A stretch of DNA of 64,000 bases from Podarcis tiliguerta (taxonomy: Eukaryota). The first letter of the stretch is position 1; each line of letters begins with the position of its first letter. The notes under the pieces are model-generated. The model did not search any database. It had not been told where the DNA came from and was given only the letters and a program-made list of their open reading frames with translations. Of this stretch, positions 21,004 through 61,315 are shown one piece after another. The position numbers and the translations under genes are program-made. The DNA lies in the NCBI GenBank assembly GCA_965153285.1, contig OZ229121.1; one strand, 5' to 3'.

Positions 21004-21139
21004 TAGGCATAGGCAAACTTGGCCCTTCATATGTTTTGAGACTACAGTTCCCATCATCCCTGACCATTGGTCCTGTTAGCTATGGATGATGGGAGTTGTA
21101 GTCCCAAAACAGCTGGAGGGCTGAGTTTGCCTATGCCTG
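21004..21139. mobile_element. Palindromic hAT-type MITE
   Basis: TIR aggcataggcaaact / agtttgcctatgcct; self-complementary interior; imperfect 8-bp TSD ctgtagaa/atgttgaa. Confidence 0.8.
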
Positions 21140-37758: not shown

Positions 37759-40700
37759 TACTTTCTTTGCAGTATTACTAAGCTAAAAAGATTGTATGAT
37801 TAGTGCACATGCTAATGGAGAAATAAAATGTGATGATTACATGAACTTTTTGTTATGTAAACAGCTACTGCCGGGGCTGTGGAGAGAGTTTAATTCTCCC
37901 CCCACCCAGTCAGGATCCCAACTATCTGCAGATTCTTGAGTTGAGTTGCTCCTAGTAAAGTCAGAAGCTCTTGACCCTTTGGGTATTGGATTTAGGTCAT
38001 AGATGTTCAGCCTGTGAAACAGATGGCACAGTTCACTGACAGGAACAAGATGAACTGTAGGCCTGACCATGACATAAGGCTGCACCCTTCTGCATTGTTC
38101 TGAGGCCTGTTCCTTGGCTCAGTAGGCCAAAGGCAAAACCACATCAAGGCACCAAAGGATGCATATTCTAGAAATGATGTCAAATGGATAGCTACTTGTC
38201 AAACGGATGACCAATGTTTTATGTAAACTAGATTAGGAAGAGTTGCTTATTAAAAGGTGGCCTGTAATGGTGGTATTAAATTTATATATTCCAACCAATC
38301 ACAAAGTATGTAAGGCCCCTTAATTTTAAGTGAGAGTTGCCCTAAGGCAGGCACATCCAACTCTCTATAGAGACTGCGCTCTACTCCCAGTATAAAACTG
38401 GCAGTGATCTACTCATTGTCATGTTTTTTTGTGTGTTTTTTTTTTTTAGAGTGGAGGGCCCACAGTTGTTGAGCTTTGTGGGGGGAGGACAGACCAGAGC
38501 TGTTGAGCTTTTTTATGAGGGAAAGCCCAGAGTTGTTCTGGCAAATTTTCTTTGTGTTCTTTCATTTCAATAGGCAGTTTTGGGTAAATAAGGAAAAACA
38601 ACAACTCAAGAGTTTTCCTAATTTCTTAAGGACATAATTGAAAATGCTAATCTATGTGAAGGTGGGTGACTATTGTGTCAGGATTGCAGTGTTTTTACAA
38701 CTGCAAATGTTCTATGTGGATAGCTGTGTGTATGCAGGAAGCGAACATTTGTGCAAATGTCCAGTCTGACAGGATTTGCTGATGTAGTCTGGGTTTCATT
38801 CAGTACAGAGGGTTAGATTCAGACTTGTTGCATTTAAGTTCCCAATGAAATCAAAGGGACAAGTTAACCATCACTCAGATTCCACTAAAATCTATGGGAC
38901 ACAAGTTCAGTTGCTTTAAGTCCGAACCCAAATCAGAGGAACTAAGTTGGTCTAGAAGCTATTGAAAAATGTATTGGCTGAACATGTTCCAGTTGGTCTC
39001 TCCAGGGAAATCATGTGGGAGAAAGAAACCAAGAGCATGCATGCAGTGGGAGGAAAGCCATCCAGCTTCCTGCTCATGTACCCTTTCACCAAATGGTTTC
39101 ATAAATGGGAACAAAACTTGTGTAATTCCATCTCTTAAGAAAGGGCAGGTGCACATGGAAGCCCATTCACATGGATACCTATTTCTAGAACATTTACCTT
39201 GCATGAGAAGTTGCACAGGATGGAGATGAGGGGCATGGGCCAGGCAAACTGCTATACTTACCTGAAAATAGTGTATGAGCTGTCTCTCCAGTGGATTTAA
39301 ACACCAAATGGGAGTCCATTTTGCTGCATCTCAGGTAACAGCACTGATTTCTTAAAGAATGAGATGGGTGATGAACAATCTAAATTCTTTCTTTATAGAT
39401 GAGTAATGTGTCTGATGTTCTGTTTCCTTTTGCAAAAAGCACCCCCCCCCCCAATTTTCCTCTTGCAGAAAGCATCCCAAAACAACAGTGGAATGCTGAG
39501 TAATCAGATGTGATTAGAACTCATCCTATATTTATTTCAAAATGTGTTCCTGTAACATCACAAGGCGCTACTATAACTGATAGAGTATTGGTACTCTACA
39601 GCTCAAATTCCCGGCCTGAACTATGCACTTCTTGAGCACATGCGTTTTGCTTTGTGGTAATCCTGCTTTTGCGTCAAAGCCAGGATTAGAATGCACAAAC
39701 AGGTGAGGAAGAAAGCAAAGCAAAGGGAAATTAAAATTAGAACAAGATCTTCTAATGTGCAAAACATAAGCCATCTGGGGATTTTAACTTGGTTTTAGAT
39801 TCTTAGCTATTGGGGAGCTGCCCAGGATACTAGTGATTGCTAAGGATTGTAGAACACTGTAAATCTCTACACCAAATTGCACTAGAGGGGATTATTTAAA
39901 ATTGCTCTAACAATTTAGATAAAGTTGTCATTAGTGTCTAATTAAACTAATTCTTAGATGTTGTGCAGAATGGACTCCTTTCCATTAGTGCATAAGTAGT
40001 TCAGTATTCATGAAACCTGAGTGTGTACAAGCTAGCCTACTTTACAATGGGGAAATGAATATTCATTGCACTGCTCACTTCGGCCTCACACTCTGCCTAT
40101 AGCTGGCATGTGGCTATCAGAAAGTTGCCATAAGGGAATGTAGGCCTCAAGCTCATAAGGGTCCTCACCTCTGATGCAAACCTCCCATGTTCTAGTCAAA
40201 TTTCACAACACTTCTACTGCTTAGAGCCACTCCAAAACCCGATATGGGAATTTTCCTGTTCCCCCAGTTCAAGCCTCTTCCAGTAGTTAAAATAGTGGTT
40301 GCTACTATTACTGCCCCTTCCATGTTGCTGTTTGTTCTTTTTGTGCTTAATTGCTAATTAGAGCCTATATGCCAATTTATTCCTGTATGTATAGGCACAA
40401 ATACATGAGCCAAAATGCACTGCCCAGTTTCACTGTTGACAATAGGGCCTATAGCAGGCCTGATTACCCTATGGCTGCCCAAATATTGTTGGCCTCCAGC
40501 TCCCATAAGCCCCAGGCAACAAGGCCAATGGTCACAGATGACAGGAATTATACTTCATCTGGAGGGCCTTGATTAGTCACCCTAGCCTACAGAGTTCCTT
40601 ACAGCTGGAGCAGAAAGTGTTGGGTTAGTATGACAAAAACGAGGAGCTACACAGAGCATGTGAGCTTTTTCTGCACTGTTTATAAGCTTTTCATCCAGCT

Positions 40701-42084
40701 GCTTTCTCCTATCTCCCTTCTCCTGGATCCACATCATAACAGCAAGAGACTTCCTTAGTCCAAGGTAGAAAAATTGCTTTTTCCTACAATGCTTTCTGAG
40801 TGATGCATTCCAATGAGGGGTAGGACTTCCAAGACCCCCAGCACTTATGTCCACTTCTAAAGAAAGTGTGCATTAGATTAGCTTTTAAAATATGTATTCA
40901 AAGAGAATACAGCAACCCATCATATATTTTGAAAAACTAAAATAAACATTTGAAATCATCAGATTTGAAATCACTGGATTGAAAGATTCCAAACAGGTGC
41001 TTTCCCTGATTAAAATAGATTTTGTTGTAACCGTCATACAAGGATAGCCTTGCCATTTTGTTTAAAACCATACTGAACGCTGCAGCACAATGTTTTGATG
41101 CCATATGGAAACATCAAAATGCACAGCAGCTGCCAGCTCTTAAGCTGAATAGATGGAAACTTTTCATGTTGGCTTGAGAAGTTTCCCAGTGGATTAATCT
41201 ATGTAGCATCAAATCACCTCACAGTACCAACTCATTGTACTATAGGGGGTCACATGAGACAGAAAATACTTTCTTTTTGACTGCGTGAAACTCACTCATT
41301 GCCAATATTGTCACAAAACTCAGTATGCCACTTCTATATGCATGTTTCAGACACTATTCATTTTGTCCAAAACCATTTTTTTTTTTTTGCAGCACATGAT
41401 GGACTTGAGTCAAACAATGCTGTGTGCAATAAATCCCCCACCCCCATCTTGTATGCCTAGTATATAACGTGTCTCAAGAACACTGGTTATGACTAATTTC
41501 TACGAAACATGATCTGGTAAATAAATGAAACTTGTGTACTTTTTAACACTAATATCCCTTTTAACAAGCAAGGATATTTGCTGCACTATAATTATTTGAA
41601 TCTGGTTATCATAATAATGATATATTAACAGCTAGAGAATCTTTAATTTCTTAAATTACAAAATATGTGGAACAGACAGCACTGGGCTGAAATCTAATCC
41701 ATTTGTATAAACAGAAACCATTGCTTTTTTGTGTGGTGCGAAAACATGTTACAATGGCTAATTATGGTTTGCAATTACTTTTTGAGCACTCTGTAATTTT
41801 GGTCTTAGATAAGGGTATAAAGGGAATTTTCTGCATATTCATATGCTGATGCTAGCTGCATTTCTTATAATATAACCTCAGCTATCTGTAACTTGCTTAT
41901 CTAAATTTTCCCTGTGGGGAAGTGGGGAGGGGGGGATATTCAAAGGAGCCTCTCCCATACCCTTCCTTCCCCAACTGCTGCTCAACAGCCCTGCTGGCAG
42001 TCAGATCTTACTATCTAGTACAGTAGTTGCTGCCACCACCTCTTTTTTTAAAAAGTCACCTACAGCCCTAGAAACAAGAGAAAC

Positions 42085-42261
42085 AATGACTTTTAGAAGA
42101 CATCTGAAGGCAGCCCTGTTTAGGGAAGTTTTTAATGTTTTACTGTGTTTTTAATATCCCGTTGGAAGCCGTCCAAAGTGGCTGGGGAGGCCCGGCCAGA
42201 TGGGCGGGGTATAAGTAATTATTATTATTATTATTATTAGTTCTAGTAGTAGTAGTAGTAA
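42085..42261 (+). mobile_element. LINE (L2-like) 3' end with (TTA)n/(TAG)n tail
   Basis: 3' terminal motif ...ccagatgggcggggtataa followed by trinucleotide tail. Confidence 0.5.
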
Positions 42262-44700
42262 TTGTTAAAGCCAAGAATCCTGGACCAGCACACACCACGA
42301 CTCCAACCAATCCTTTGCAATTTGCACAGAGCATAAAGCCAGCTCTCCAGCCCTCTGTTTCTTCCTGAGAATAAGTCAAATTTCTGGTTTTACCACTCTG
42401 GCCTTCTGGAACCAGAGATCTACACATGTGAGGATTCCCAAAGCCTGAGGGGCAATCACACACAGACTCCACTAGCTCAACCGTGGAACTTTACTTGAAA
42501 TAACAGGTGGGGAAAGCAGGCAACAGGTCAAACAGAATACAAAATAAATTGAGCACTGTGGCTCCACAACTAAACTACTCTTGGTAGGGCCAGCCCACCC
42601 ATGAAATGGGTGGAAGCAGCTGTTTTGGGTGGAGGAATCCTGCTGGGTGGTGCCCCTGCTGCTGCACAACTCTGGTAAGCAAGACTTTGGTGGGGGATCG
42701 GCAGGGGAGGCAGCACCTTCCCATTTCTCCTCAGGCAGCAAAATGGGATGGGCTGCCCCTGAATTCTGACCTGTCCACTTTTGTATACTAGGTCTAGTCT
42801 GAATAGGCCACAAGGATAATCAACATCATGGTAGTTTGGAAGACATGACCTAGATCCCTTGTAATGAGATGGAACAAAGCTGCAAGGGAGCCTTGGCTTT
42901 TAAATGCTCTCTCTGCTGACAATGGTGGGTGTGCCCTCTGGCTCTTTCTAACCAAACAGAGCCAGAGCCGGTCAGTGAGTTAGCTTGGCTTAGAGAACTG
43001 GTGAGCCCAGGAAACCAGAGTCTGTGTCACTTCCCGCTACAAGGAGATAATACTTATGGCTGAAATCCTAGATGTTATGGATTTAAAATGTTTTATTGGA
43101 GGGGGGAACCAAAGTTATTTTAACCACTTTATCTAAAGCCCAGGTGTGTTCTCACTTACAGGGCAGAGGAGTGCTGTAGCTGGGGGAGTTTGCATTTCCC
43201 CACTCCCTTTCTGTCTCACGCTTCTGGTTTACACCAGCCCACCAACTGCTATTTGCCCTTCAAGGCAAAATATACAGGTACACATATGTCTTCCTCCACA
43301 GAGCTAAAAGTGACAGGGATATTTCAACCATGAAAATGCTGTGTGCAGAAGGATTGGCTGTGTCCTGCTATGCATTCTGAAATAGTCGGAAGGCTTGAGA
43401 AAGTACAAATGTTATAGATATGTCTTATTTGACACTTGAAACTTCTGCAGAGGATGTCTGCTTGCACACTGCCAAGAGGAAATGCATCTTCCCCAAAAAG
43501 AGAGGGGACAAATTTGCATACATGGAAATTTAGAAATTACTATTGTTTAAATAGAAATACATAATACGTCTCACCATGTTAGAGAAGACTGATCAGGTCT
43601 GCTGTTCTCCTTTCATTTACAAATTATATATAGTGGCTCTCTCACAGTAAATCTTCAAGCAGATCTTGGACAGTATCTTTTGAGGATGCCCTAGCTCTGA
43701 ATTTCCTTAAGTTGTACAGGGGATTGGACTAGGATAGCCTACTGTCCATACATAAAATGAATGAGGACTCAGAACGAAAGGTGCTCTTTAAAGTGCCGAA
43801 ACTAGTTTGAAACTACAATGAATCCACAGGGAAAACTGCTGTAGTCACTCCATGACTTCTGAAGTGTATGTACCGTGCTGACATGGGCTGGGAAGTTATC
43901 ATCTCAGTGTGGGTAGAGGGGTGGTGAGAAAGCAGTCCTGGCATGCTTGCCTGTAATCAGGACTATCATTCCTAGTGTCAGACTTATAGTAGGAGTAATC
44001 TGTCTTTCTGCCAGACGGTGCGTTTCTAATTAGTCAAGAAGATTTTTGCATTTTGCTTCTGAATTACATTCTTGAACACATGCTTGCTTTTTAGATTTCC
44101 AATATAATAATGCCAGCTTTGTGTCTTTTTAAAAACGTATTAGGCTTGCATCCTACCCCCAACAATCAGGGTAGATGACTCATTTATACTTCAAATAAAA
44201 CACTACAGAAGAGTGCTTCTCTATAAGTTAGGGGTTCTCATTAGGAATACAGTATCATTGTTGCTCATTATTTAATGATCTATATGGTGGTCTACGGAAC
44301 TAGTTTGTTCAATGCTGAATTATCCAGAGTAACGTTTTGTATGTTGTCCTGCTCAACCCTGTTAAATGAATCTTGTACTGTAAAGCAGCAACTGACTTCA
44401 GAGGAAAATTTGTTGTAGAAATAGAATGCATTCTGTCTTCGAACGCCTTTGATTTTCCTTCTACTTCAAACCACATTAACTCACATTTTCCCCACCAGCA
44501 CCATTGCTAGTAGAACATAGTGTTTTTACTGCATTTTTGTCATTGAGTTTATGCTACTAAACAATGGGTAGCCAACTTGGCACCCTCCAGATGTTGGACT
44601 CCATCTCCCACCATCCTTGATCTTTGGACATGCTGTGTGGGGCTGATGAAAGTTAAGAGTCCAACAGCATCTGGACGGCCCAACATTGGCTATCCTTATA

Positions 44701-44942
44701 CAGTGGTACCTCGGGTTAAGTACTTAATTCGTTCTGGAGGTCCGTACTTAACCTGAAACTGTTCTTAACCTGAAGCACCACTTTAGCTAATGGGGCCTCC
44801 TGCTGCAGCCGCGCCGCCAGAGCACGATTTCTGTTCTCATCCTGCAGCAAAGTTCTTAACCTGAAGCACTATTTCTGGGTTAGCGGAGTCTGTAACCTGA
44901 AGCGTACATAACCTGAAGCGTATGTAACCTGTGGTACCACTG
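44701..44942 (+). mobile_element. Tc1/mariner(Tigger)-type MITE, fuller-length copy
   Basis: TIR cagtggtacc / ggtaccactg, TA TSD, repeated aacctgaa units. Confidence 0.85.
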
Positions 44943-45134
44943 TAGTAAGAATGTAATAGATTCTCATACAAGCCTTCCAAGTGGACATTAGATTTAGATC
45001 TTGTTCACCAGGATTTTGACAGCAAGGCAGATTATGTATTATTATTCTTTAGAAGGCCTATATCCCCACCAAACTTTGTATTGTGACTATTTTCCAATAT
45101 ATTAGTGATACAAAGTGGTTCTAGAAGCCAGCAG

Positions 45135-45990
45135 TATCAAGCAATCTCCTGTTGTCCAACTTGCCAACCTCTTCGATGATATTCATCAATACGGCATGCC
45201 AAATGCTGTTGTAACGCCGTGACGGCGTCACTCAACTGCTGGATGGTATGGGTCATGGTCTGGTTGTCCTGAGCCAAGGTCACCAGCGCGGCCACCGGAT
45301 CGGCCATGGCTTCTGAATTACCCAAACACACCCCCAGGAAGGGGGAGTGCGGGTTGTGGTGGGAGCAAACTGTGCTAGGCCCGAGGGTTAATCCAAGCCA
45401 CGCGGTCCAGGTTCGGTCACGAATCCAAGGATTCCATGAGGAGTCAGTCCAACAGGGCCAAGGCAGGAAACCAGGCTAGGTCAGGCACAAGGTCTCAGGC
45501 AGGTTCCAGCAAGCAGCAATGTTGCTCCCGCAACCTGGGGCAGGGTCCGGCAGCCTTTTATCTCTGACGGGATAACGGCCGGTCCTGATCCCCCGGTGAC
45601 TCACCTCCCTGTCTCGCCCGAAGGCGAGCACTTCTCCTGCGAGTACTCAGGTCTCTCCTTCTCTCAGACCTGAGTCTCTGCAGCTCGGGAGATGTCGGTG
45701 GGTTACTAGACCCAGAGGCTGCCTCAGCCTCTCCTGACACAACTGGTAGTGGAGCAGCTGTATGTGATTGCACAGCAGAGGGCAATGAAGTAATCCTCAC
45801 ATCTGGAGCCAGGGCAGGCTCAGGCTCCTGACTCAGCCCTGCTGGTGCTTGTTGCAGGGGAACCTGTGCAGACTGGGGCTCTTCAGAATCAGGCCCCAGA
45901 CTCAGTTCAGATGCCGCCTGAGGCAGAGGATCCGGTGTGGATTGAGACTCCTCCGGCTCTGAGTCTGAGCCCGAGTCCCAGGCCACCACA
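45135..45990 (-). mobile_element. LTR retrotransposon remnant (Gypsy-like): LTR ~45314-45990 plus gag-like start
   Basis: GC-rich block; minus strand starts TGTGG, has TATA-like GATAAAAGG, and ends ..ATTCA just before gaagccATG of coiled-coil-like MADPVAALVTLAQDNQTMTHTIQQLSDAVTALQQ. Confidence 0.55.
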
Positions 45991-48864
45991 CCTTTCTTGA
46001 TTTCAAAGGTGGACAGATGGGGATGTTTTGAAGTGGCTTTCCTAAATGTCAGATAAAGCAACAGGTTGCTCCAGACTGTTAGTTGCACAGAGTTTAAATT
46101 AAAAACAATAGGACTTGTCATGACTAACCACCCCCAGTGATTGGAACTGAAGTATGGTCCAACACAATGTCTTTTCAAGGAAAACATGTTAATAGCTCGT
46201 GCTGTCAGTGCTGTTCTATATAGGATGGCTGGGGGGCGGGTGTACAACAAGCATTGAAATGTTCCTGACATGCCCTCCCCTTAGCCCATAGGGCAAGTAG
46301 AGTAAATGTTATGAAGAATATTGTTCTAAAAGGTAACTCACCAAACTGTTTAATTGGACTGCAGACAATCTATTGCTTTAGAATTCTGTGATGCATTCAG
46401 CTGATCCTCCAGCAGCAAGGCTTAATAAAGCTTCAGTTTGTTCACAATACTGTTTAGAAACTGTTCTAGAATTGGCAGAGGCGCCCTTCATCCTCTGCCC
46501 TGGAAGCTCTTAATGCTTATCCCAGAATTGAGGACAGTTCTGTTTAGTGAATGGTAAAAGAAAAGCAGTTTGTTGTTGCACAAAGGCACTTTCTTCTTAC
46601 ATTGTTTTCCTTCACTTGTTCCTTTCCAAGATCCATCCCTAAAATGTCCTAAGTTACTGTTTTCTTTCTGGAACCACTTAATATGTGTTCTTCTTTCAGT
46701 AATATATGAATTATACATTGTGAAGGAATCCTCCATTTCATAGAATCATAGAATTGTAGAGTTGGAATTGTGCAGAAGCTCTGCAACACCATCATGGTAG
46801 TCAAGATAACCCTACAATTAATTGGCAGTTGTTGTAACAATGACCTCATATATGTTTATATTCACTTGCTTTAAGCTAATTGGACTGTTTTGATGTTATC
46901 TGTGGGACTGGAGTGCTGGGCTCTGAGCCCAGAAAGGGGAACTATCTTTATTTGCCACCTATGCCCTCATAAAGTGATATGAAGTCCTGGGCAAAGTGAC
47001 TTTTGTGTATAAAGAATGTATGAATGTTTGCTTAGCTGGCGACAAGCCATCCATTTGCTGCAGTGCCTGTCCCGTGCCTGTAAAGCCTGGGAGACCTGGT
47101 TGGCTGATTTGCTGTAAGTTTACACCTTTCTTTTAATACAACACTAGAATTTATCACTCCTTTGATATCCCTGCATCCACTCACACAGGTTCTCCTTTGG
47201 CCCTGTGGTTCAGAACAGGAAGGGACCCTGAGGGTCATCTAGTCCAACTCCCTGCAACACAGGAATCTCAACTAGATCAAATTCAACTTAAAGCTAAAGA
47301 ACCACACGTAGGGAGGGCAAGATTGTCCTTCAACAGTTTGTACTTGTACAGCATATCTGGTCACTGTCCTCCCCACTATGGTGTGATGTATTTTATTTCT
47401 ATTACAATAGTCTTCTGGCATTTTAAAAGACTAGCACTTTTATTATGGCACAAGCGTTTATGGATGATGTTCTGTCTCTACTGCCAGATGCCAGAGACAG
47501 TATGCCTTGGTGAATCACAAGTGAGGAGTGCAGTGTTGAACCCAGGTCCTGCTTGCAGACTTCCCATAGGCATTTAGTTGGCCAGTGAGAAGAGGATGCT
47601 GGATTAGATGGGCCTTTTGGGCCAGTGCAGTAGGGCTTTTCTTATGTTCTTATATCTTAAGAATGCTAAATGTTCTATTTGAACTATTGATAACAGGGGC
47701 TATATAAAGTAACTGGAGGACTAGTTACATAGTGGAGGTCACCCTGATAAGGTGGGTGGAGGGAAGTACTCTTAATTGAAAGTCTCGATGTTCACTGTGC
47801 AGAAGTATATTCCATCCATGGGCATATTGACTACATATGTAGTTACTGACATATGTTGCTTGTCCCCGTCACAACTACCAACAATCAGCCACGAGTGGTG
47901 AACCATGTAGATCGGGTACAAGGTGGAGAAACAACATGGGTAAACTTTATGGCAGAGGTGGGGAGCCTGTGGCCCTCCAGATGTTAACACTACAACTCCC
48001 ATTGGCCTACCCCTGCCTTATGGGTAAAAAACAGGAAAAGTCAGCATGAGGTTGCTGTCTAATTCCAACCTTTGTCAACTTTCTGCTCAACGCTAATGTG
48101 CCTGATGTAATTTGTATCTGATACCAAATGTTGTAGTGCCATTCATTTTTGAAATAAATATCATGCTTCACTCCATGGCCAGGATGTGGAGTTCCAAGCT
48201 TACAATGGACATTTTTCCAATCTCGTCTCACACTACAGGCACTTGCACCCCTGTGAAGCTGCTCCTGGAATATTACACAAATGGCTGTTATTGGAAATAC
48301 TGGTTAATAGTCATTCTTCCCCCTCTGCTCACTGTCCTGTCCAAGAAAATAAGTGCTTACAACTCACACAGAACTTTCTGGCTCCTGGACCAACACAAGC
48401 TAATATATGAAATTACTAGTAAAAAGCGACTAGAGGTCACTGTAATAAATGGGAAGTTGCTTCACTGGCTTGAAGCCTGCTGAAAAAGCATTTATATATG
48501 CAGAAGCACAGAAGGTACAACAGTCATTTTGCCAGATTTCTGTATGCTTAAGACTTTGAGTAATACGATTGCAATTGTTTTGCAAATTCTGTTTGCCAGG
48601 TATGCACACTCAAAAGCTTTGATGTTTATTTTTTCATAGTCTATCCTTCACCCTACGGGCTCAGGGCAGAGATTATGTCTATAATAAAATTACAGAAAAT
48701 GATGTAAAATTCGCAATGAAAAGACAATCAGAAATGGAAAACTATTATGCCAGCTGGGGAAAAGCTGTATTATTGTGTCTAAATTCTAAGGGAGGACAAG
48801 TTGTATTTTCCATACGGTAATGATTGCATAGTAAGGTGACTGAGTTTACCCTGAGTGGGCTAGA

Positions 48865-49830
48865 AAGTGCCAGATTTATGTATAGGCTAAGTAGGCTGAA
48901 GCCTAGGGCCTCTAAATCCAGGGGGCCTCCCCAGCCCGCCCACCCCCCAGCGGGCAGCTCCCCTCTCCCCAAATTGCAAACCCAAGACTTCATGCAAGGG
49001 CAGGGCAACTCGGGCCCAGCAACTATGAGACTCAGGGCCAGCCAGTGGGGCCCAATTTTAAACTCGAGGGCCCAACTTGAAATTTTTTTGTGGGGCCCTA
49101 GTTCACAGCCAAAGTCTGCAAAATCTTAGATATAAATCCCTGTGCCAAGTCATTTTCACAAGGTCAGCAAAGCCATTCAGAAATCAGTCCTATTATTGAG
49201 TTCTTGTGCAAGTTTGTACAGTTCACTTCTGGATTTTTTAAAGGAAAATTGGAGAAGATTTTGATGAGCTTGAGAAACAAAGCAAAAGCAACCTTGCCAA
49301 ATGTTAACCACAAAACAAGGAGACAAAGAGTGAGGGAACGACAAAGAAATGACAGAAGTGCACTTGATGCCTTAGATGCACTTTCTTTAAGAGATAAGTT
49401 TAGGATAAAATCATTTATTCCTATATTGGATGCACTTGAAGCCAATTTAAAAAGTACTGTGTACAGTGATATTCCACAATTATTTTCCATTCTTGCTATC
49501 CTGATAGCATCCAAACAAGAAATTCAGCAAGGTGTTGAACTGTTGATGGAAGCATACCCAGAAGCTATTCCTAATGTGGAAGCAATTTTGTGGCTATTTC
49601 TTAGCTTTATGGTCACTAACAGCTCGGGAGAGAGTAGTTTTTCAAGATTCAAAAGAATTAAAAATGAATTAAGGGCCATAATGTCTCAAGAGAGGTTTTC
49701 CGCATTCTGTACATTGAAAGTGACAAACTTAGACAAACAAATTCTTGTTGGGTCTCTGGACCGTAATAAAGATTGATTGATTGATTGATAAACAAATTTT
49801 GATGAAGTTTTCTGATGTCCTTTAGAGGAG
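48865..49830 (+). mobile_element. Decayed hAT DNA transposon with transposase C-terminal dimerisation-domain remnant (49204-49776)
   Basis: IPNVEAILWLFLSFMVTNSSGESSFSRFKRIKNELRAIMSQERFS resembles the hATC motif; left end resembles the TIR/subterminal end of the MITE at 11173-11489; right end uncertain. Confidence 0.8.
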
Positions 49831-49944
49831 AAACTGTGAATTGCAGAATTTTAAATACCCGTCATCATCCTTGGCTTCACTCAAGTGATCTTTTTCAAGA
49901 AATCGGCAGACTGTGGCAGAAGTTAAAGTCTTTTCTGTTAAACA

Positions 49945-49958
49945 CTGCCATCTAGTGG
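49945..49958 (-). promoter_or_regulatory. CTCF core motif CCACTAGATGGCAG
   Basis: Fits the CTCF consensus CCACYAGRKGGCRS. Confidence 0.55.
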
Positions 49959-51373
49959 TGAAAGATAAAACTACCCTTTTAAAACGACAATATTCTACCA
50001 TTTCCTCTGCTTAAGAACATAGAGTTTCGTAAATGTTTATGCATTGTTGTCTTCTGAATTCATTTAAATATTTATGTATTTAATATAAATTTATTATTCA
50101 ATATTTTATTTAAAAATCAGAACTTTTAAAAAATAGCACTTCAAACATTTCTTTAAAATACCATCTTCCCCTAGCTCCTCTTGCTATATTGTGCTGCCTT
50201 AAATCTTATTCCTGAAACTCTTTCCCAGCAAACTCCTTTGGTCTTAAAAACGCTTCAAATTATGGAAATTCCAACTGCTGACACACCTTTGAAAAACTAC
50301 TTCTAGTTTATCCTACATTCCACAATTCTTTTCCACATTTCCATAAATGTCTAACCCTCTTTAGGCTGCAATCCTATACCCTCTTACCTGGTAGGAAGTC
50401 CCATTAAACGATTAGACTTCGTAGAATTGCTCTGTTGGTAACCGAACTCTGAAGAACTTCTCTTTGATATCCTGTTGACTATCTCCTCCGTCTTTCTAAA
50501 ACTCCAGAATAAAATATTTTTGTAAGTTTACTCAAATTATTAGCAACTTAGCAAAACAAAATTTTCTGCTTGATCATTTTTCATGTTGCAACTGTACTCC
50601 TTTTGCTATGAAATACTGACCATCCTCTAGTCTCACACTCCAAATTTATGCTCTGTTTTTATTACCTTTTTTATGTTAACTATTGCCCCTTTCCTTAGCT
50701 CAGAAAGGGCAGAGATTTGCTGGTACTACAGAAGACGGTCCAGAGATAGCTCAAGCAAACTCCATTGAAGACAGGGAGAGGGAAATTATTTCCAGAAACA
50801 GAATAATGTAATAAAGTAGAATAAAGTAGCTAGCCAAACTGCTAAGGAAGGTGTGTCTTTTCAAATCATGTTTGAAATGATTTGAAGGCTTAGTGTCTTA
50901 GAAGGCTTTGTGTCTTTGGGCACAGGGAACATAAAATTGTATTATCTTGAGGAGCAGTTTCTGCAAAGATGCACACTGGCACATAGAACCAGCCAGGTCA
51001 CTATGGAATAAAGTTAGCCCAAAGGAGTTGTGTGACAGAAATTTATTTATTTTATTAAATTTGTATCTCACCCTTCCTTCCAAAGGAACCCAGGAATATA
51101 AAAGCAATAGCAAAACTTAGTATTAGGAGATATTTGTTTCCTTTTAGCTTAAATATATTCTGTAGGTTTTCCTTTTTGAAAGAAAGAGGAAGTGACACAT
51201 GATAAACCTTTCACAGCAGGGGAAGCCGGTATGGTTCCTGGTTGTTAAGAGCTGTAGTCCAACAACATCAGCAGGTCACCACATCAGGTACCTCATTAGT
51301 TACCTCTGCTTTGTACTTTATGAAACTATGATATTGCCCCTAGGTTACTAATAGTTAACCTAGATGTACTTAC

Positions 51374-51406
51374 CTAGGTTTTCTAGAAAGACAAGTGTCT
51401 ATAAAT
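51374..51406 (-). ncRNA. snoRNA host gene small exon downstream of SNORD93 (5' boundary uncertain: 51406, 51398 or 51382)
   Basis: Perfect donor CTAG|GTAAGTA at 51373; AG acceptors 64-88 nt from box D. Confidence 0.6.
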
Positions 51407-51466
51407 CTAGTAAACAGAATTAAAATAACTGTAAAGGTACATTTAAACATACTTTATCTGTCTATC

Positions 51467-51556
51467 TGGCCTCAGAAAATCCTTTGAGCCATCAGATCTG
51501 TGTTTAACACTTTACAGAAGTATCCACAATCAGTTCAGGGTTTTCATCTTTGGCCA
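51467..51556 (-). ncRNA. SNORD93: C/D box snoRNA SNORD93 (HBII-336) orthologue
   Basis: TGGCCAAAGATGA...CTGA...CTGATGG CTCAAAGGATTTT CTGA GGCCA: boxes C (AAGATGA), D', C', D; 9-bp terminal inverted repeat tatctggcc/ggccagata; similar to recalled human SNORD93; same synteny (between FAM126A and TOMM7, opposite strand). Confidence 0.9.
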
Positions 51557-51626
51557 GATATTCTATTCACAATGACATAAGCTGAAAATGAAATACATCA
51601 TACTAGGCAAGAACATTGCAATATAC

Positions 51627-51683
51627 CTTAGATGGAAGTAAAGACATGGCAATGTTGTAAGTCTGCATCTTTTATTACAGAAT
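51627..51683 (-). ncRNA. snoRNA host gene internal exon (57 nt)
   Basis: Strong acceptor TTTCTTTTTTCTTTTTGTAG| and donor TAAG|GTATAT opening the SNORD93 intron. Confidence 0.7.
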
Positions 51684-53509
51684 CTACAAAAAGAAAAAAG
51701 AAATCTAGGATTAACATTTCAAAAGGTATTTTGTTGGTCCACCTTCATGCAACATAATCTTCACATACAATCCTCATTCTTTGAAACTCCAGTGATTAAA
51801 TTCATCTTTTTTTTAGAGTTGAATTCGTATTTATGTCTTAGCTTCAATTACCATTTAAATAAATTATTATCAGCTTCCTGAAAATCCTTGCTATTTTTAA
51901 ATTTTATTTCTTAGACCTTATTTTATACAGCCTCTGTAGCACAACTTGTACAGCACTGACTCGAATAAAAGTTGTAAGCAGTCAAAAATTTGGGCCAACA
52001 TCAAATGTTACACTAAGAACTAAGCAACTGCCACCAACATGAGCTGCTACTACTGTATGTAGTTAGTAACTTGCAATGCTATTTTTCTGGAAATAGAGTT
52101 GCCAGAACTCACCATGAACACTTCCCTTGTTCTCTTAAATGGTAATGGCACCCTCCTGAGACTTGCCAGAACCCACCCAAAAGGTGCCAGAACTGAGTTC
52201 CTCCTGAAAAAGAGCCCTGGTAATTTGACATTTCTACATATACCTTGTCAAGGAAGCAGCTAAGTTAAGACATCACATCCCCCCCTTTCTTTTCCTCCTT
52301 TCCTCCCACTCCAAATTAGTAACTCAGCAATTTATACTGCAAACTCCTTGTGCTAGAATTTGAAGAAGTATAACAAACTGTGCACACCAAGACTACAGTG
52401 CTGTAAATAATAGCTTTCTCTCTCAGCTAAATGTTATCCTCCTAGCACGGCAATTTTTAAGCATTTTGCAATTTGCTGCTTCTTAGAGGATCACACATTT
52501 TTCTAATGCTTCAACTGTCACATTGGAGACTGTTTGAGAAGTTTCCAAATTACCCCAGCTTTGGAATTCAACCGTGCAGAAGGTATGAAAGACAAAAAAC
52601 CAGTTAGCTAAGTGGATGGGCTCTGCTTGGTTTGTGGATGCTCTTTATGCTGCAAATATTTGTTAGTCTGGACACAACTGTTCTGGGTTTATTCAGCCTC
52701 CCAAACCTAAAATGTCCAACTGACAAAATAGGGTAGACTGTGGGTCAACAAGTCACTCTCCCAAGCTGGGTTCTAAACAGTGAGGCACACAAGCCTCTAG
52801 CTTCATACCAAGTGGGCTGCAATAGTATTTTGACATGGAACCCATGGGTCAACCCCCCCCCCCCACCAGCCAGTTAAGCTAATCAAGGTGCCAGGCTCTT
52901 GAAAGGAGGTGCAAGGCTCTGGCAGGGTCTTAAGAGCTCTCTCACCTCCGTCACAAAGCTGGAAAAGTGCTCAATACGCCTTAGGAAGGAGGGACTCTAG
53001 GACCCTGGCAAGAGCCCTTATGCCTCCTGCCCATAGCCTAGCCTAGCACCTCATTTACCCAGCTTTGGGAAGGCAGTGCAAGGACTGCCTCCAAAATTCT
53101 GTATCAGTGTATGTAGAGGAGCAGAATTTAAAATAGTAATCAAATTTCTGAAATGGGCAGGTTAGCTCATTTATATATTTCATAACTTAGATTCAACTGC
53201 ACTTCTTTTTGGTTTATATTCATGCCAAAGCAAAACTGATAAAATGTAACTGTTCTAATCGAGATGTGTATCCGGAAATGCTGATGTGGCACCTGTGGGC
53301 ACACATGCTTTCCCTGGTGCCTCACTTGCTGAAAACCCAAATTCTACTGGAGTTATCAGTACCGGTTTTAGTGCTTGGTTGCAGTGTTTGTGTGATGCCC
53401 AAAAGAGTTTCTCCACTTTGTTAAGTATGGCCCCAAAAGATAGGCAACAGCTCATACTATTTCAGTGAAGGGTAGGCTAAGAAGAAACCCAAGACAGGCA
53501 ATCTCCCTA

Positions 53510-54225
53510 CTGCATCTGAAACGCTCCAGAAAAGTCTCTACAAACTGGGTGAACAGATGATAAAATGGCAAATCAGGTTCAATGCAGGTAAGAGCAAAAT
53601 GACACGTACTGGCCAAATCTATACACTAATGGCATCTGAATTCACTGCAGATTCATGGAAAATGGACAAATTCATGTAGATAAACTCATGGCTACTAGCC
53701 ATAGTGGTTTTATACTACCTCCATGGTTAGAGGCAATGTGTCTCTGAATATGAGTTGTTAAACACGCCAAGTGGGGAGACTGCTGAAGTACTCGTATTCT
53801 GCTTGTAGGGATACCCTTTGGCATTTGGGAACAAGATGCTGGATAGATGTCTTAAGAGGAATGGTTGAATGAATTGGGTATGTTTAGCTTGAAGAGAGAC
53901 CGAGAGGAGATAGGATAGCCATCTTCAAATATCTTAAACACTGTTGCATGGAGCGAGCTTGTTTTCTCCTGCTCCAGAGCCTAGGACCCAAACCAATGGG
54001 TTCAAGTTAACAAGAAAAGTGTCTGACTAAACATCAGGATGAACTTTCTGACAGGAACAGTGGAACTGACTCCCATGAGAGGTGATGGACTCTCCTTCCT
54101 TGGAGGTTTTCAAGCAGAGTTTGGATGTCTATTGCATATATGATCTAGTTGTGATTCCTGGATTGCTGGGGGTTGGAGTAGATGACCCTTAGAATCCCTT
54201 CCAACTCTACAATACTGATTTCATG
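53510..54225 (+). mobile_element. Two adjacent CR1 LINE fragments (junction ~53849)
   Basis: LQKDL.KL.EW..KWQM.FN-like remnant plus CR1 3' end, then a second CR1 3' region ending ...ccttccaactctac. Confidence 0.6.
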
Positions 54226-54644
54226 ATCCATCCAACAAAGGAAGCATGCTTTTTTCTTATTCAATCATTTTCCCATATGCAAATTTAATCAAAACTCATA
54301 GGGCAGATCTACAAGGGTTGGTTGACTTGAACATCAGCCAGGGGGTGGGGATGGGGGGAGAGATGACAAAAGCAGGACATAACAAAGGTTTAAAAAACTG
54401 TGGATAGTGTAGAGAAAATTATTTTTTCAAGGGTTGTTTTTTTTAAAAAAATTCTCTGTTGAAGGTTCAAGATATGTGAATGAAAATATTTCTCCATCCA
54501 AACGTTAATTGGCTACTACACCATTTGGTGAAGGCCAATAGCCAGGAAATGTTTTAAGCAGCAGCAGAAAAATACATGGCAGAACATCCACTTTCAAAGG
54601 CAGCACCTGTCAAGAGTGCTAAATCCAGACAAACAGGGTTAGGC

Positions 54645-54770
54645 TAAGGTTACCAGATTTTTTTCAATGAATCCAGGGTCACTTTTCAACTTCCTACTAA
54701 ATAGATGGATTTTGTCAGGGGACTGATTTGTAAATCCGGGGACTGTCCCCGGGAAAATCTGGTAACCTTA
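54645..54770. mobile_element. Young hAT MITE (126 bp)
   Basis: Perfect 17-bp TIR taaggttaccagatttt / aaaatctggtaacctta, perfect 8-bp TSD ggttaggc. Confidence 0.9.
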
Positions 54771-55131
54771 GGTTAGGCAAGTGGTAGAACACAGAATTTA
54801 CATGCAAAAGGAAATGCTGTTGACTTCCATGAGGGCTTTGGAAGCAAAACTGAATTTCCACTCGACGTCTGCCAGGGAGCCTGCGGAACTCACATCCCCT
54901 GCCTTCTCCCTCTTAACCTCAAGTGTACATAGCCTACCACGAGGGTCGGTCCACGTGCTAACAACTTTTCCACGAAAAAACGTAACGAGCTGGCCCTTAA
55001 AAAACACTTCTGTGATGTTAAAGAGGGGGAAAACTCCGTTTTAGATCATGTGTGAAGAACAAGCGTGTAGCGAGGTGCGTGTGTGTAATGCTCAGATACG
55101 GGGTGGAGGGGGGATATTTGCCACGACTTAC

Positions 55132-55202
55132 TCCGGCGGAGATAGGCAGGCACTACTATTAGCCGGGAAGAGAAACGAAATGGACCCACTGCGACGGAAA
55201 AG
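55132..55202 (-). ncRNA. Exon 1 of divergent snoRNA host lncRNA (SNHG26-like)
   Basis: Begins CTTTTCC (TCT/5'TOP initiator), no ATG, ends at perfect donor GA|GTAAGT. Confidence 0.65.
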
Positions 55203-55536
55203 GTGGGGGAAAAACCGACTCCTGAATGTAGGAATTTCCATCCAATATTGGCGCGTCCTCATCCGCCAGTCATGAAGCGTAGCCGATTTCAACACATTTC
55301 GTTTTCGCTTCGCCCTACGCGGCAAGCTCGGCTCTAGGTTTCCTCAGCAGCGGCTGCCGTTCCCGCCTTTCCCAGCCGGCCTGAGGCGGCGCCGCTGCCC
55401 TACAACACATCCTCGCCGAGTAGGCCTCCCCTCCGCGCGCATGCGCCGTAGCGCCAGGAAGCAAAAGGCAGGCCTTTCTTTACCACCCTCGCCTCTCGCC
55501 CTTCGCTGCCTCCGACACGACGACCCGGCCGCCGCC

Positions 55537-55639
55537 ATGCCGAAGCTGAGCAAAGAGTCCAAGCAGCGCCTGCAGCACTTGTTCAAGGGCGGGCAGTTTG
55601 CCATCCGGTGGGGCTTCATCCCGGTAGTACTCTATCTAG
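55537..55639 (+). CDS. TOMM7: TOMM7 exon 1 (MPKLSKESKQRLQHLFKGGQFAIRWGFIPVVLYLG)
   Basis: Kozak gccgccATG; Tom7 signature AIRWGFIP; donor G|gtcagt. Confidence 0.97.
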
Positions 55640-56145
55640 GTCAGTTCTGAGCTGGGGACAGCAAGTAGGTTGCCGCGGGCAGCTTGGTCACGGAAGACTC
55701 GGTATACTCTGACTTGAGGCAGGCGGCGGGGGCGGGGCGGGGCAGCTTCCCGAACCGTTAACGGTCCGTTAACGGTCTTCCCGTCAACGGCTGGTTCGAG
55801 CGCGCGCGGCGCGTCTTCTTGGAACGCGGCGGCGATAGTGACGCAACCGAGAGGAACTCGCGCGGTGAGGCGAGTCACGTGGCCGATTCCCCATAGCTCC
55901 TCGTGATTAGCGGGGAGAGCGCCCTGTGGGGCAGAAGCGGCTCCTTGCACTTATCCGCTTCCGTTCCCTGAACCAAAATTCTCCGCTTCACAGCTCACTT
56001 TAGCGCTGGTAGTTTCGGATTTAACCTAGAGAAAAGGCAAGCAGGCTGCATCGTGAAAGCCCTCCTGTTTTTTCTTTCCTTGCCTAGTACTCGTTGGAAG
56101 GCGAGCTTGTGTGAATATGGTGATAGAAGGATCTCCTGTGACCGT

Positions 56146-56283
56146 CAGTGTTTTCCAAACTCGGTCTCCAGCTGTTTTTGGACTAGAATTCCCATCACCC
56201 CTGACCTCACTGGTCTTGCCCGCTAGGGATGATGGGAGTTGTAGTCCCAAAAACAGCTGGAGACCCGAGTTTGGGAAACACTG
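56146..56283. mobile_element. Palindromic MITE (same interior family as 21004-21139)
   Basis: cagtgttttccaaactcgg / ccgagtttgggaaacactg inverted ends; self-complementary interior. Confidence 0.8.
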
Positions 56284-56957
56284 CTTCAGACTGTCTGTGG
56301 GCGACACAACTGTTGGATGCTCTTGTGTGCTGAAAGTTATAACACCTTGCAAGAAGAAGTTATTATATCCAGCAGTAAGCTGGGCTACATTTGTCTCTCT
56401 GGTGTGCTAGCTTTCTGCTTGAGTGAGCTGAATGGAGGAATGGGTGAATAATCACCGACAATCTCCCCACCCCAGTTTGCAAGACAGACTGAAGTTGCTT
56501 ATAAATAGTTTTAGTTTTCAGAATTCTGTATTTCACGATTATGTGAACTCCTAAATGTGTTTAAGCATGACACAAAGGTAAACATGGTTAAAATTGCTCA
56601 CAGGTGTGTTATTTCTTTTGTGGTATCAGGAGTTTGTTTAGAAGTCAGCAGATTTCTGAAAACTAGAGGCCAATTTTTAGAATGTTCTTAGAATTGCCCA
56701 GGCCAAGCTCAATTAGTTCAGCAAGGATTCTGTTCTATGAAGTGTCATTGACAACCTCTTTTTCATTTGCTGGGAAATAAATTATTCCATTATCCATGGG
56801 CCTGTTGTGCAGGACATTTCTTACTGAATTCCATTAACAATGCAGTAAAGTCCTATTTATTAGTAAGATCAGAGACTGTCTTTCTCTGTCTGGTGGATTT
56901 GGTGGGCAACATACATCATGCCACAAAATAAGGACTGTTTTAGATGTCAGAGATACT

Positions 56958-56995
56958 TTTAGAAGAGTATTCTTTCTTTAGAAGAGTATTCTTTC
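56958..56995. repeat. Perfect 19-bp tandem duplication (tttagaagagtattctttc x2)
   Basis: Directly visible. Confidence 0.9.
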
Positions 56996-57355
56996 TTCCC
57001 AGGCAGATTATCAGTGCAATTCTAACTTGGAATCTATCTAAATCCTAATACATTTAATGGTGCTTACACTCAGGTAAGTATGGGGTTAGGCTTGCAGCCC
57101 AAGTCACCTGCTGGTGCAGAGGAGTGGGGTTTTCAATGTGTGTTGCTGAGCACGCAATAGAATGGACCCCTTTCTTTGCACTTCTACTTTATGGCATGTT
57201 GGGGTGGGGAGTGCAGGAGACTGTATCAAAGTGCAATGCTATCTATTACATTACTGTGGCTAGTCATGTGTGCATTAATTCTAGAAATATTTATTATATG
57301 TAAAAGCAATAATATATTCATGATATAAACTGACAGATACATTGTTTGTAACTAG

Positions 57356-57404
57356 GATTTAAGAGAGGTGCAGATCCTGGAATGCCTGAGCCAACCGTTT
57401 TGAG
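57356..57404 (+). CDS. TOMM7: TOMM7 exon 2 (FKRGADPGMPEPTVLS)
   Basis: actag| and AG|gtatgt, 49 nt. Confidence 0.97.
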
Positions 57405-58007
57405 GTATGTTTTCACTAGTTAATACCTCAGCAGAAATAATGCCTGCTAAAGGAGAAAATAGAACATGTGCTTTGTGATTAACTTGGGAGGGGAGAGTTT
57501 GAAACTTATGCTACACTCCTACACTCACTTACCTAAGAGTAAGTCCCATTCCATTTATATATTTCTTACGCGTGCACTTACAGAAATATCACACAAATTA
57601 TATTTTAACTGTTGCTATATTCTCATGTAAGGTGTAGGTCAGGATTTGGTGCTACCATTTTTTAATTTAAGGGACACACCATAAGAAGGAAGTGTTATAT
57701 CTTTTGGTTGCTGACTTAAGTATATCATCAAGAGATATGACCTGATTGTGTCAAGTCCTCTTTCTCTTGGAATGAGCTTGCTTCAGTAACATTACAAACC
57801 AAAAACTGGTAACCATCGAATGACTTAAACACCGACAGCTTACCCTGCTTGAAACTGAATTTTTAAAAAGGCAGTGTATGTTGTTTGATCAATGTACAAG
57901 GCATAGGCCTTCTGTTTCATTTTGTTGTTGCCTGATGGCACTAATAAGGCCTCGTGGAAAATATGAGTGGTTACATGTTAAGAGTTGGGATGAAGTGGAG
58001 AGTAGGA

Positions 58008-61013: not shown

Positions 61014-61315
61014 CATAGAATTGTTGGAAGGGACCCTAAGGGCCATCTAGTTCAACCCCCCTGCAGAGCAAGATTCACAGCCAAAAAATCCCAGACAGAT
61101 GGCCATCCAACTTCTGTTTTAAAAAATCCCATGAGGGAGAGTCTACTATCTTCCAAGGTACTTTGTTCCACTGTCTTAACATCTCCTACAGTCAGAAAGT
61201 TCTTCCTAGTATTTAGTCAGAATCTCATTTCTTGTAATTTGAATGCATTGGGTTGAGTCCTATCCTCTGGAGCAGGAGAAACAAGCTTGCTCCATCTTAT
61301 GTGTGACAGCCCTCC
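61014..61315 (-). mobile_element. CR1 LINE 3' fragment
   Basis: Reverse complement resembles the 53849-54225 fragment; begins catagaattgttggaaggg. Confidence 0.6.

What the first reader, a model, noticed from the sequence alone, without database searches (positions are those of the whole stretch)
51374..55202. Hidden divergent 5'TOP snoRNA host gene sharing the TOMM7 promoter
Seen on the minus strand: a TCT-type start (CC+1TTTTCC, 55202); a 71-nt ATG-less exon ending at GTAAGT; a 57-nt exon (51683-51627) with strong splice sites; a ~220-nt intron holding SNORD93 at the usual ~65-90 nt from the 3' splice site; then a tiny exon ending CTAG|GTAAGT. Spliced, it encodes only a ~21-aa ORF (MQTYNIAMSLLPSKIYRHLSF if the 33-nt exon is used). 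Established: this is GAS5/SNHG-type architecture. Recalled: human SNORD93/SNHG26 lies between FAM126A and TOMM7, tens of kb from TOMM7. Inference: here the host starts only ~270 bp from the TOMM7 start, coupling snoRNA output to a mitochondrial import gene.
Basis: partly seen in the sequence, partly recalled or inferred. Interest (0 to 1): 0.8.

Follow-up and report, generated by a model that had tools for sequence, protein, structure and literature searches.

The report
SNORD93 host gene beside TOMM7 promoter
A small spliced non-coding gene on the minus strand carries the snoRNA SNORD93 in an intron and starts in the same CpG-island promoter as the mitochondrial import gene TOMM7; the gene is real, of a well-known kind, but its claimed exact "5'TOP" start is not shown.

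Summary
Rfam places SNORD93 at 51556-51467 on the minus strand, 61.7 bits against a gathering score of 60.

The main prediction held. A transcriptome contig of a related species (run X2) joins 55132 directly to 51683. The skipped 3,448 nt end in CT..AC, which is GT..AG on the minus strand. That contig is also spliced at the TOMM7 exon 1/2 junction, so it comes from RNA.

A minus-strand SNORD93 host RNA therefore starts at most about 405 bp from the TOMM7 ATG, inside the CpG island. As in human SNHG26, SNORD93 sits in the second intron.

- **Not shown: the start.** The C start at 55202 is untested. Contigs cannot show starts, the TCT motif is no more frequent here than chance predicts, and RNA contigs reach upstream of 55202.
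- **Not shown: the rest of the model.** The 51627>51406 junction and the 3' end were not seen. The gene may end at an AATAAA cluster near 51050.

Non-coding snoRNA hosts paired head-to-head with a coding gene are known, so this is a new member of a known kind.

The parts
55132..55202 (-). Host gene exon 1. The 3' end (donor) is shown.
   Evidence: The donor at 55132|GTAAGT is used in the X2 contig joint 55132>51683. The exon has no ATG. RNA contigs continue upstream of 55202 in X1, X2, X5 and X11 (table 8).
51684..55131 (-). Intron 1, 3,448 nt, holding interspersed repeats.
   Evidence: table 5: 'skips 3448', ends CT..AC on the + strand, no ambiguity (both = 0). The repeat at 53948-54205 has other copies in the window. 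Low-depth unspliced contigs tile the intron in X1, X2 and X5.
51627..51683 (-). Host gene exon 2, 57 nt. The acceptor is shown and the donor is predicted. Holds the ATG of the 21-aa ORF at 51668.
   Evidence: The X2 contig enters 30 nt past the acceptor at 51683. Sequence context, translation.
51407..51626 (-). Predicted intron 2, 220 nt, holding SNORD93.
   Evidence: GTATAT...AG by reading. X2 record 17 (181 nt) lies wholly inside it, at 51410-51585, with its low end within about 3 nt of the predicted 3' splice site. The junction itself was not seen.
51467..51556 (-). SNORD93 box C/D snoRNA.
   Evidence: Rfam RF00606, 61.7 bits (gathering score 60), model positions 1-74 of 74. It has a 17-nt insertion and a 1-nt gap before the D box relative to the model. 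It is the only Rfam hit of note in 40000-58000 at E<=1.
51374..51406 (-). Predicted exon 3, 33 nt if the GTAAGT donor at 51373 is used. It may instead run on as a terminal exon to about 51010-51030.
   Evidence: Splice-site context. The stop of the 21-aa ORF lies here. No junction was seen.
51042..51056 (-). Three overlapping AATAAA hexamers, a candidate poly(A) signal of the host gene.
   Evidence: hexamers begin at 51056, 51051 and 51047. The unspliced X1 contig 52126->51009 ends 33 nt after the last hexamer, and all four runs have zero depth in 50701-50900.
55203..55473 (.). Spacer between the two proposed pyrimidine starts (272 bp from C to C). It holds a CCAAT/ATTGG palindrome (55242-55251) and the only GCGCATGCGC palindrome (NRF1-type) in the window (55437-55446).
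   Evidence: Motif scan. CpG island 55201-56000. Indels between species cluster in 55209-55316 (table 4).
55474..55639 (+). TOMM7 exon 1. ATG at 55537. Proposed start at C 55474 in CCTTTCTTT.
   Evidence: Sequence. The translation matches squamate TOM7 at 94-97%. The high-depth X5 TOMM7 contig ends at about 55472-55493 (record 30).
57356..57404 (+). TOMM7 exon 2.
   Evidence: The loose end of the X2 contig behind 55641 matches here and nowhere else in the window. AG/GT boundaries.

Best explanation
This is the squamate counterpart of the non-coding snoRNA host gene SNHG26. It is a compact minus-strand transcription unit that begins inside the TOMM7 CpG island, head-to-head with TOMM7.

Shown:
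- The first exon is spliced from 55132 to 51683.
- The SNORD93 sequence lies just downstream of exon 2.

Inferred:
- SNORD93 lies in a 220-nt second intron.
- The snoRNA is released from the excised intron by debranching and exonucleolytic trimming, the usual route for vertebrate intronic box C/D snoRNAs.
- The spliced RNA is a by-product with no ORF longer than 21 aa.
- The unit probably ends at the AATAAA cluster near 51050, which would make the gene about 4.2 kb.
- Both genes draw on one bidirectional promoter, a CpG island with NRF1-type and CCAAT palindromes. Their transcription is therefore likely to rise and fall together.

Open: whether transcription starts exactly at the C of CTTTTCC (55202), which would make it a 5'TOP RNA, or at dispersed or upstream sites.
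For: -, table 5: joint 51683/55132, skips 3448, ends CT..AC, both = 0, in X2 contig record 22 (738 nt).
- The contig stops exactly 30 nt into exon 2. A 31-mer graph would do this where the spliced and unspliced paths merge.
- The same contig is spliced at the TOMM7 exon 1 donor. Its 223-nt loose end matches only TOMM7 exon 2 at 57358-57386, so the run is RNA.
- SNORD93 scores above the Rfam gathering score, on the same strand, 70 nt below the exon 2 donor and 60 nt above the next AG.
- CpG island 55201-56000, and no other island within 9 kb.
- exon 1 has no ATG and the ORF is only 21 aa.
-, table 8: low-depth unspliced contigs tile 55300->51009 in X1, X2 and X5 and stop at 51009, after the AATAAA cluster.
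- human SNORD93 lies in the second intron of SNHG26, between TOMM7 and FAM126A. RNA-seq shows transcription around SNORD93 in lizard, turtle, chicken and platypus.
Against: - The junction is seen in one contig of one run, from a related species (90-96% alike), not the window's own species, for which no RNA run was on offer.
- In X1 and X11 the contigs run on unspliced past 55132.
- The junction 51627>51406 was not among the joints listed, and 19 joints were not shown.
- Contigs carry no strand or end information. Strand rests on splice-site polarity alone.
- Contigs that bridge the whole spacer in X1, X2 and X11 mean some RNA covers 55203-55473, so the two units may overlap or start elsewhere.
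- Holes in coverage prove nothing, because human-like contigs are silently dropped.
Confidence: 0.85

Rival explanations
1. The host gene is real, but it is not a 5'TOP gene starting at 55202. Transcription would start at dispersed or upstream sites in the CpG island (around 55300 or beyond), or from a dual-initiation promoter in which the C start is only one of several. Exon 1 would then be longer and carry upstream ATGs.
For: - X5 record 29 (depth 4.4) covers 54986-55298 with 16 more letters beyond. That puts RNA about 100 nt upstream of 55202, while 55315-55492 is empty in X5.
- X1, X2 and X11 contigs are continuous from host exon 1 to TOMM7.
- The TCT motif is at chance frequency, and a second match has its C at 55172.
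- Dual YC/YR initiation is described for snoRNA hosts (10.1101/2021.02.11.430834).
Against: - Upstream coverage could come from plus-strand TOMM7 upstream starts (a TCT-like CCTTTCC lies at 55366), from unstable promoter transcripts, or from traces of DNA.
- Exon 1 as drawn has no ATG and no indel between species, while indels cluster just upstream in 55209-55316 (table 4).
- Classic non-coding snoRNA hosts are 5'TOP genes (Smith and Steitz 1998, cited in PMC7073466).
Confidence: 0.5
2. The minus-strand RNA is only an incidental divergent transcript of the TOMM7 promoter. SNORD93 would be made mainly from a separate promoter nearer to it, or from a different upstream exon.
For: Only one contig shows the exon 1-exon 2 junction. 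In human the host start is recalled to lie far from TOMM7.
Against: - The junction lands on the exon immediately upstream of the snoRNA intron.
- 51684-55131 holds no CpG island or other promoter-like feature and is AT-rich and repeat-rich.
- A strong U1-type donor (GTAAGT) 71 nt from the proposed start, with no AATAAA before it, is what productive divergent genes show rather than short-lived promoter transcripts (reading).
Confidence: 0.07
3. The joint is an assembly artefact, a chimeric contig, and there is no spliced minus-strand RNA.
For: The contig also fuses two genes (TOMM7 and the host). The side of the joint is only 30 letters, and the tool warns about short sides at likeness under 95.
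Against: - The joint falls exactly at the two positions predicted in advance from the sequence, with canonical GT..AG and no ambiguity.
- A 30-mer with up to 3 mismatches matching by chance in 12 kb has odds of roughly 1e-9 (my own estimate).
- A 30-letter side is what a k=31 graph gives where the spliced and unspliced paths rejoin.
Confidence: 0.03
4. The spliced RNA is a micropeptide mRNA encoding the 21-aa ORF, not a non-coding host.
For: An ATG-initiated 21-codon frame spans exons 2-3.
Against: The ORF depends on an unverified junction and is very short. It was not searched as a joined sequence (step left out by rule), and there is no evidence of conservation. Short ORFs of this kind are typical of SNHG RNAs.
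Confidence: 0.03

Closest known systems
Human SNHG26 / mouse Snhg26 (2700038G22Rik), the host gene of SNORD93
   Same: It hosts SNORD93 and neighbours TOMM7. The snoRNA is in the second intron (human), and the RNA is non-coding and spliced. The compact size of about 4.2 kb is close to the mouse gene (chr5:23,850,597-23,855,038, 4.4 kb, PMC11452505).
   Different: Here exon 1 lies in the TOMM7 CpG island, at most about 405 bp from the TOMM7 ATG. Human SNHG26 starts at chr7:22,854,126, which I recall to be about 30 kb from the TOMM7 start (not checked). Exon sequences could not be compared, and the papers report poor similarity even between human and mouse.
Classic non-coding 5'TOP snoRNA host genes (GAS5, UHG/SNHG1, U17HG; Smith and Steitz 1998)
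   Same: Short exons, no meaningful ORF, the snoRNA in a short intron 60-84 nt from the 3' splice site, and a C followed by a pyrimidine run at the proposed start.
   Different: There is one snoRNA rather than several, and the TOP start is not demonstrated.
Divergent lncRNAs from bidirectional CpG-island promoters (HGNC '-DT' class). From my own knowledge, snoRNA hosts of this kind include ZFAS1/ZNFX1 and GAS5/ZBTB37.
   Same: Head-to-head with a coding gene within the 300-500 nt that HGNC uses (PMC7073466). CpG island, no TATA box, NRF1-type and CCAAT motifs.
   Different: The partner is TOMM7, itself reported as a TOP RNA (10.64898/2026.09.25.754325). Both strands carry a TCT-type motif, 272 bp apart.

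Membership tests
SNORD93 (Rfam RF00606) | Covariance-model score at or above the family's gathering score over the full model | tested here: met
   61.7 bits against 60, model 1-74/74, E = 3e-9. The margin is small because of a 17-nt insertion.
SNORD93 (Rfam RF00606) | C and D boxes with a terminal stem | tested here: met
   GAUGA near the 5' end, CUGA before the 3' end, and a UGGCC/GGCCA terminal stem in the alignment.
SNORD93 (Rfam RF00606) | Guide complementary to the 18S rRNA target in the right register | not tested
   No rRNA reference was on hand. There is a 1-nt gap before the D box. This is the subject of another note (s1-827844).
Non-coding snoRNA host gene (SNHG type) | Spliced RNA polymerase II transcript on the snoRNA's strand | tested here: met
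   Joint 55132>51683 with GT..AG on the minus strand, in an RNA contig of a relative.
Non-coding snoRNA host gene (SNHG type) | snoRNA lies within an intron that is spliced out | tested here: inconclusive
   Splice sites 51626 and 51407 are present. X2 record 17 lies inside the intron and ends at its 3' edge. The junction 51627>51406 was not seen.
Non-coding snoRNA host gene (SNHG type) | No long or conserved ORF in the spliced RNA | tested here: met
   On the three-exon model there is only a 21-aa ORF. The model is incomplete at the 3' end. The joined sequence was not searched.
Non-coding snoRNA host gene (SNHG type) | Box C/D snoRNA about 60-90 nt upstream of the 3' splice site | tested here: met
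   60 nt to the AG at 51407, or 84 nt to the AG at 51383.
5'TOP gene family | Transcripts start at a C followed by 4-15 pyrimidines | tested here: inconclusive
   The motif C TTTTCC is present at 55202 but at chance frequency. Contigs cannot show starts, and RNA is seen upstream of it.
5'TOP gene family | Growth-dependent, LARP1/mTOR-linked control | not testable with these tools
   Needs polysome or CLIP data.
SNHG26 orthologue | Synteny: lies between TOMM7 and FAM126A/HYCC1 and hosts SNORD93 | tested here: inconclusive
   TOMM7 adjacency and SNORD93 are met. HYCC1 was not located in the window: the ten longest ORFs have no Pfam match.
Bidirectional promoter pair | Opposite strands, head-to-head, starts less than 1 kb apart (HGNC: 300-500 nt), CpG island | tested here: met
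   The host donor at 55132 and the TOMM7 ATG at 55537 bound the starts to at most 405 bp apart unless they overlap. CpG island 55201-56000.

The most novel reading that the evidence does not exclude
The head-to-head TOMM7/SNORD93-host promoter would be the ancestral amniote arrangement. It has a TCT/TOP-type start on each strand 272 bp apart, around NRF1-type and CCAAT palindromes. A mitochondrial import subunit and an rRNA-methylation guide would then sit under one growth-regulated promoter. The cis link between SNHG26 and TOMM7 reported in human cells (bioRxiv 10.1101/2021.02.22.432245) would be a relic of that shared promoter, pulled apart by insertions in mammals.
Probability: 0.15. Interest if true: 0.45.

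Novelty: new member of a known kind. Interest (0 to 1): 0.3.

Why it matters
It gives a working gene model for how a reptile makes SNORD93 and shows that the host gene can sit directly on the TOMM7 promoter. That is useful for annotation. It also bears modestly on how snoRNA host genes keep or change promoters while their exons drift, and on the disputed SNHG26-TOMM7 cis relation in mammals: an effect was reported and none was found. It does not reveal a new mechanism.

Tried and rejected
- **The look-up of encoding contigs was closed.** I had TOM7 proteins of snake, turtle, birds and non-human mammals to fetch their loci and measure TOMM7-SNORD93 spacing across amniotes. This could not be done, and no other tool holds eukaryotic genomes.
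- Only one read-laying run and one run search were allowed. No run on record as RNA holds the window's own sequence. All evidence comes from contigs of relatives, and 19 joints and 629 loose ends were not shown.
- **First protein query failed.** The first try was too short (34 aa). I extended the reference by six codons of 5' UTR.
- **Rfam E-value scan of 40000-58000.** It found no second snoRNA in the host introns.
- **Pfam on the ten longest ORFs.** Nothing matched, so HYCC1/FAM126A was not placed.
- **Papers on a TOMM7 bidirectional promoter, or on a chicken or lizard SNORD93 host.** Nothing specific turned up. The human TOMM7 coordinate was not in the papers read.
- **Joined spliced model.** Exons were handled one by one, by reference.
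- **Human sequence.** No contig taken for human was used. I did not look up the mammalian or Logan TOM7 hits.
Full report
**What is in the sequence.** I read 55700-51200 on the minus strand and extracted the boundaries with a script.

- C at 55202 is preceded by C and followed by TTTTCC.
- Exon 1 is a 71-nt stretch without ATG, ending at 55132 before GTAAGT.
- Exon 2 is 51683-51627 (57 nt). It follows tttcttttttctttttgtag and is followed by GTATAT.
- Intron 2 is 51626-51407 (220 nt).
- Exon 3 is 51406-51374 (33 nt), before GTAAGT. An alternative AG at 51383 would give a 9-nt exon.
- Rfam places SNORD93 at 51556-51467 on the minus strand. The score is 61.7 bits against a gathering score of 60, over the full model, with a 17-nt insertion.
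- A permissive scan of 40000-58000 finds no other snoRNA.
- The snoRNA lies 70 nt below the exon 2 donor. It lies 60 nt above the AG at 51407, or 84 nt above the alternative AG.
- Translated exon by exon, the ORF is MQTYNIAMSLLPSK + IYRHLSF*, 21 aa.

The exon 2 donor is middling rather than strong.

**The neighbour.**

- TOMM7 exon 1 is on the + strand, with its ATG at 55537 and its donor after 55639.
- Its translation matches squamate TOM7 at 94-97% (Candoia, Varanus, Gekko), so the genome is probably a squamate reptile.
- Exon 2 is 57356-57404.
- A CpG island spans 55201-56000. The next nearest CpG-rich 200-bp window lies about 9.5 kb away, at 45501-45700.
- Between the two genes lie a CCAAT/ATTGG palindrome (55242-55251) and the window's only GCGCATGCGC, an NRF1-type site (55437-55446). 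There is no TATA box.
- TOMM7 has its own TCT-type motif, CCTTTCTTT, with the C at 55474.
- The high-depth TOMM7 contig of run X5 ends at about 55472-55493 (record 30), which fits a start there.
- TOMM7 is listed among LARP1-bound TOP RNAs in a 2026 preprint.

**Expression evidence.**

- No run on record as RNA holds this exact sequence.
- Seventeen small runs of related organisms hold parts of it. I laid four of them on 49701-55700.
- Run X2 (organism B, 90-96% alike) has a 738-nt contig (record 22) covering 55641-55132. It then jumps to 51683: 'skips 3448', ends CT..AC, both = 0.
- The contig stops 30 letters into exon 2. A 31-mer graph does this where the spliced and unspliced paths merge.
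- The other end of the contig carries 223 letters that do not lie on the window after 55641. Their start matches only TOMM7 exon 2. The contig is therefore spliced there too, and the run is RNA.
- A chance placement of the 30 letters is negligible by my estimate. The joint had also been predicted beforehand.

**What the reads do not show.**

- Contigs show no starts, ends or strand.
- In X1 and X11 the contigs run on unspliced past 55132.
- In X1, X2 and X11 they are continuous across the whole spacer into TOMM7.
- In X5 a low-depth contig covers 54986-55298 and a little beyond, while 55315-55492 is empty. Some RNA therefore lies about 100 nt upstream of the proposed start.
- That RNA could be host RNA from upstream starts, plus-strand RNA from an upstream TOMM7 start (CCTTTCC at 55366), or background.
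- The TCT motif gives no help. It occurs 323 times in the window, and two minus-strand matches in 55100-55560 compare with about 1.2 expected.
- The 5'TOP label is therefore open. I put it near even odds or somewhat below.
- The second junction, 51627>51406, was not among the joints listed.
- The only hint for it is X2 record 17. This 181-nt contig lies wholly inside the predicted intron 2, with its low end within about 3 nt of the predicted 3' splice site.

**The 3' end.**

- Three overlapping AATAAA hexamers lie at 51056-51042 on the minus strand.
- The unspliced X1 contig 52126->51009 ends 33 nt after the last of them.
- All four runs have no depth in 50701-50900.
- Low-depth contigs tile intron 1 in X1, X2 and X5 but do not continue past 51009.
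- This suggests a gene of about 4.2 kb ending near 51010-51030. Exon 3 would then be terminal, or would join a short last exon.
- Holes prove nothing here, because human-like contigs are silently dropped.

**How it most likely works.** RNA polymerase II starts on the minus strand within the TOMM7 island. A strong U1-type donor 71 nt from the proposed start, with no AATAAA before it, would favour productive elongation. Intron 1 is removed (shown). SNORD93 assembles with box C/D proteins in intron 2 and is trimmed out after splicing (inferred from the established pathway). The spliced RNA has no coding role (inferred). Shared promoter DNA makes joint transcriptional control with TOMM7 likely but unproven.

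**Comparison with what is known.**

- Human SNORD93 lies in the second intron of SNHG26, between TOMM7 and FAM126A. RNA-seq shows transcription around SNORD93 in lizard, turtle, chicken and platypus.
- The mouse gene is 4.4 kb.
- One study reports that SNHG26 raises TOMM7 expression. Another finds no effect.
- Non-coding snoRNA hosts with TOP starts (Smith and Steitz 1998, cited), dual-initiation promoters in snoRNA hosts and divergent lncRNAs within 300-500 nt of a coding gene are all known kinds.
- What is particular here is the partner and the spacing.

**Verdict.** The TOP start, the second junction and the coupling remain inference. It is a new member of a known kind, of modest interest.

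By rule, the joined spliced model was not sent to any search. No human contig was used.

Noticed in passing
window 55366-55372 and 55473-55479 (+): TOMM7's side of the promoter carries TCT/TOP-type motifs of its own: CCTTTCC, and CCTTTCTTT with its C at 55474. The high-depth TOMM7 contig of run X5 ends within a few bases of the second, consistent with TOMM7 being a TOP mRNA.
   Followed up: partly
window 56171-56257: A palindromic element in TOMM7 intron 1 gives sub-threshold Rfam hits to mir-5408 on both strands (39 and 34 bits against a gathering score of 90). It has a second copy at 21032-21126, so it looks like a MITE-type repeat rather than a miRNA gene.
   Followed up: partly
window 51467-51556 (-): Relative to the Rfam model, SNORD93 has a 17-nt insertion between the D' and C' regions and a 1-nt gap just before the D box. 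The gap could shift the guide register.
   Followed up: no
window 53948-54205; also 51900-52300 and 54500-54900: These stretches of host intron 1 pile up hundreds to thousands of contig depth in all four RNA runs, so they are interspersed repeats expressed genome-wide. The first has copies at 61023-61295, 47218-47282 and 3696-3756.
   Followed up: partly
window 54613-54769: 157 bp present in the window is replaced by 20 other letters in the organism A contig (X1 record 7). This is a lineage-specific insertion or deletion in host intron 1.
   Followed up: no
window 49204-49776 (+): A 190-aa ORF whose C-terminal part looks, by eye only, like the dimerisation end of a hAT-type transposase. It has no Pfam match at E<=0.01. 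It is probably a decayed transposon fragment just beyond the host gene's likely 3' end.
   Followed up: partly
window 4100-5600: A second, larger CpG island (GC up to 0.73, CpG observed/expected about 1) with overlapping ORFs on both strands and no Pfam match. It is probably the promoter of another gene, not identified.
   Followed up: no
window 45558-46271 (-): A 237-aa ATG ORF, low-complexity (Pro/Ser/Glu/Arg-rich), next to a GC-rich patch at 45501-45700. No Pfam match, nature unknown.
   Followed up: no
window 49883-50662: Low-depth contigs of X1 (and X2 at 50374-50576) cover this block. It is separated from the host gene by an uncovered gap at 50701-50900. It may be a separate transcript or read-through, and its strand is unknown.
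   Followed up: no
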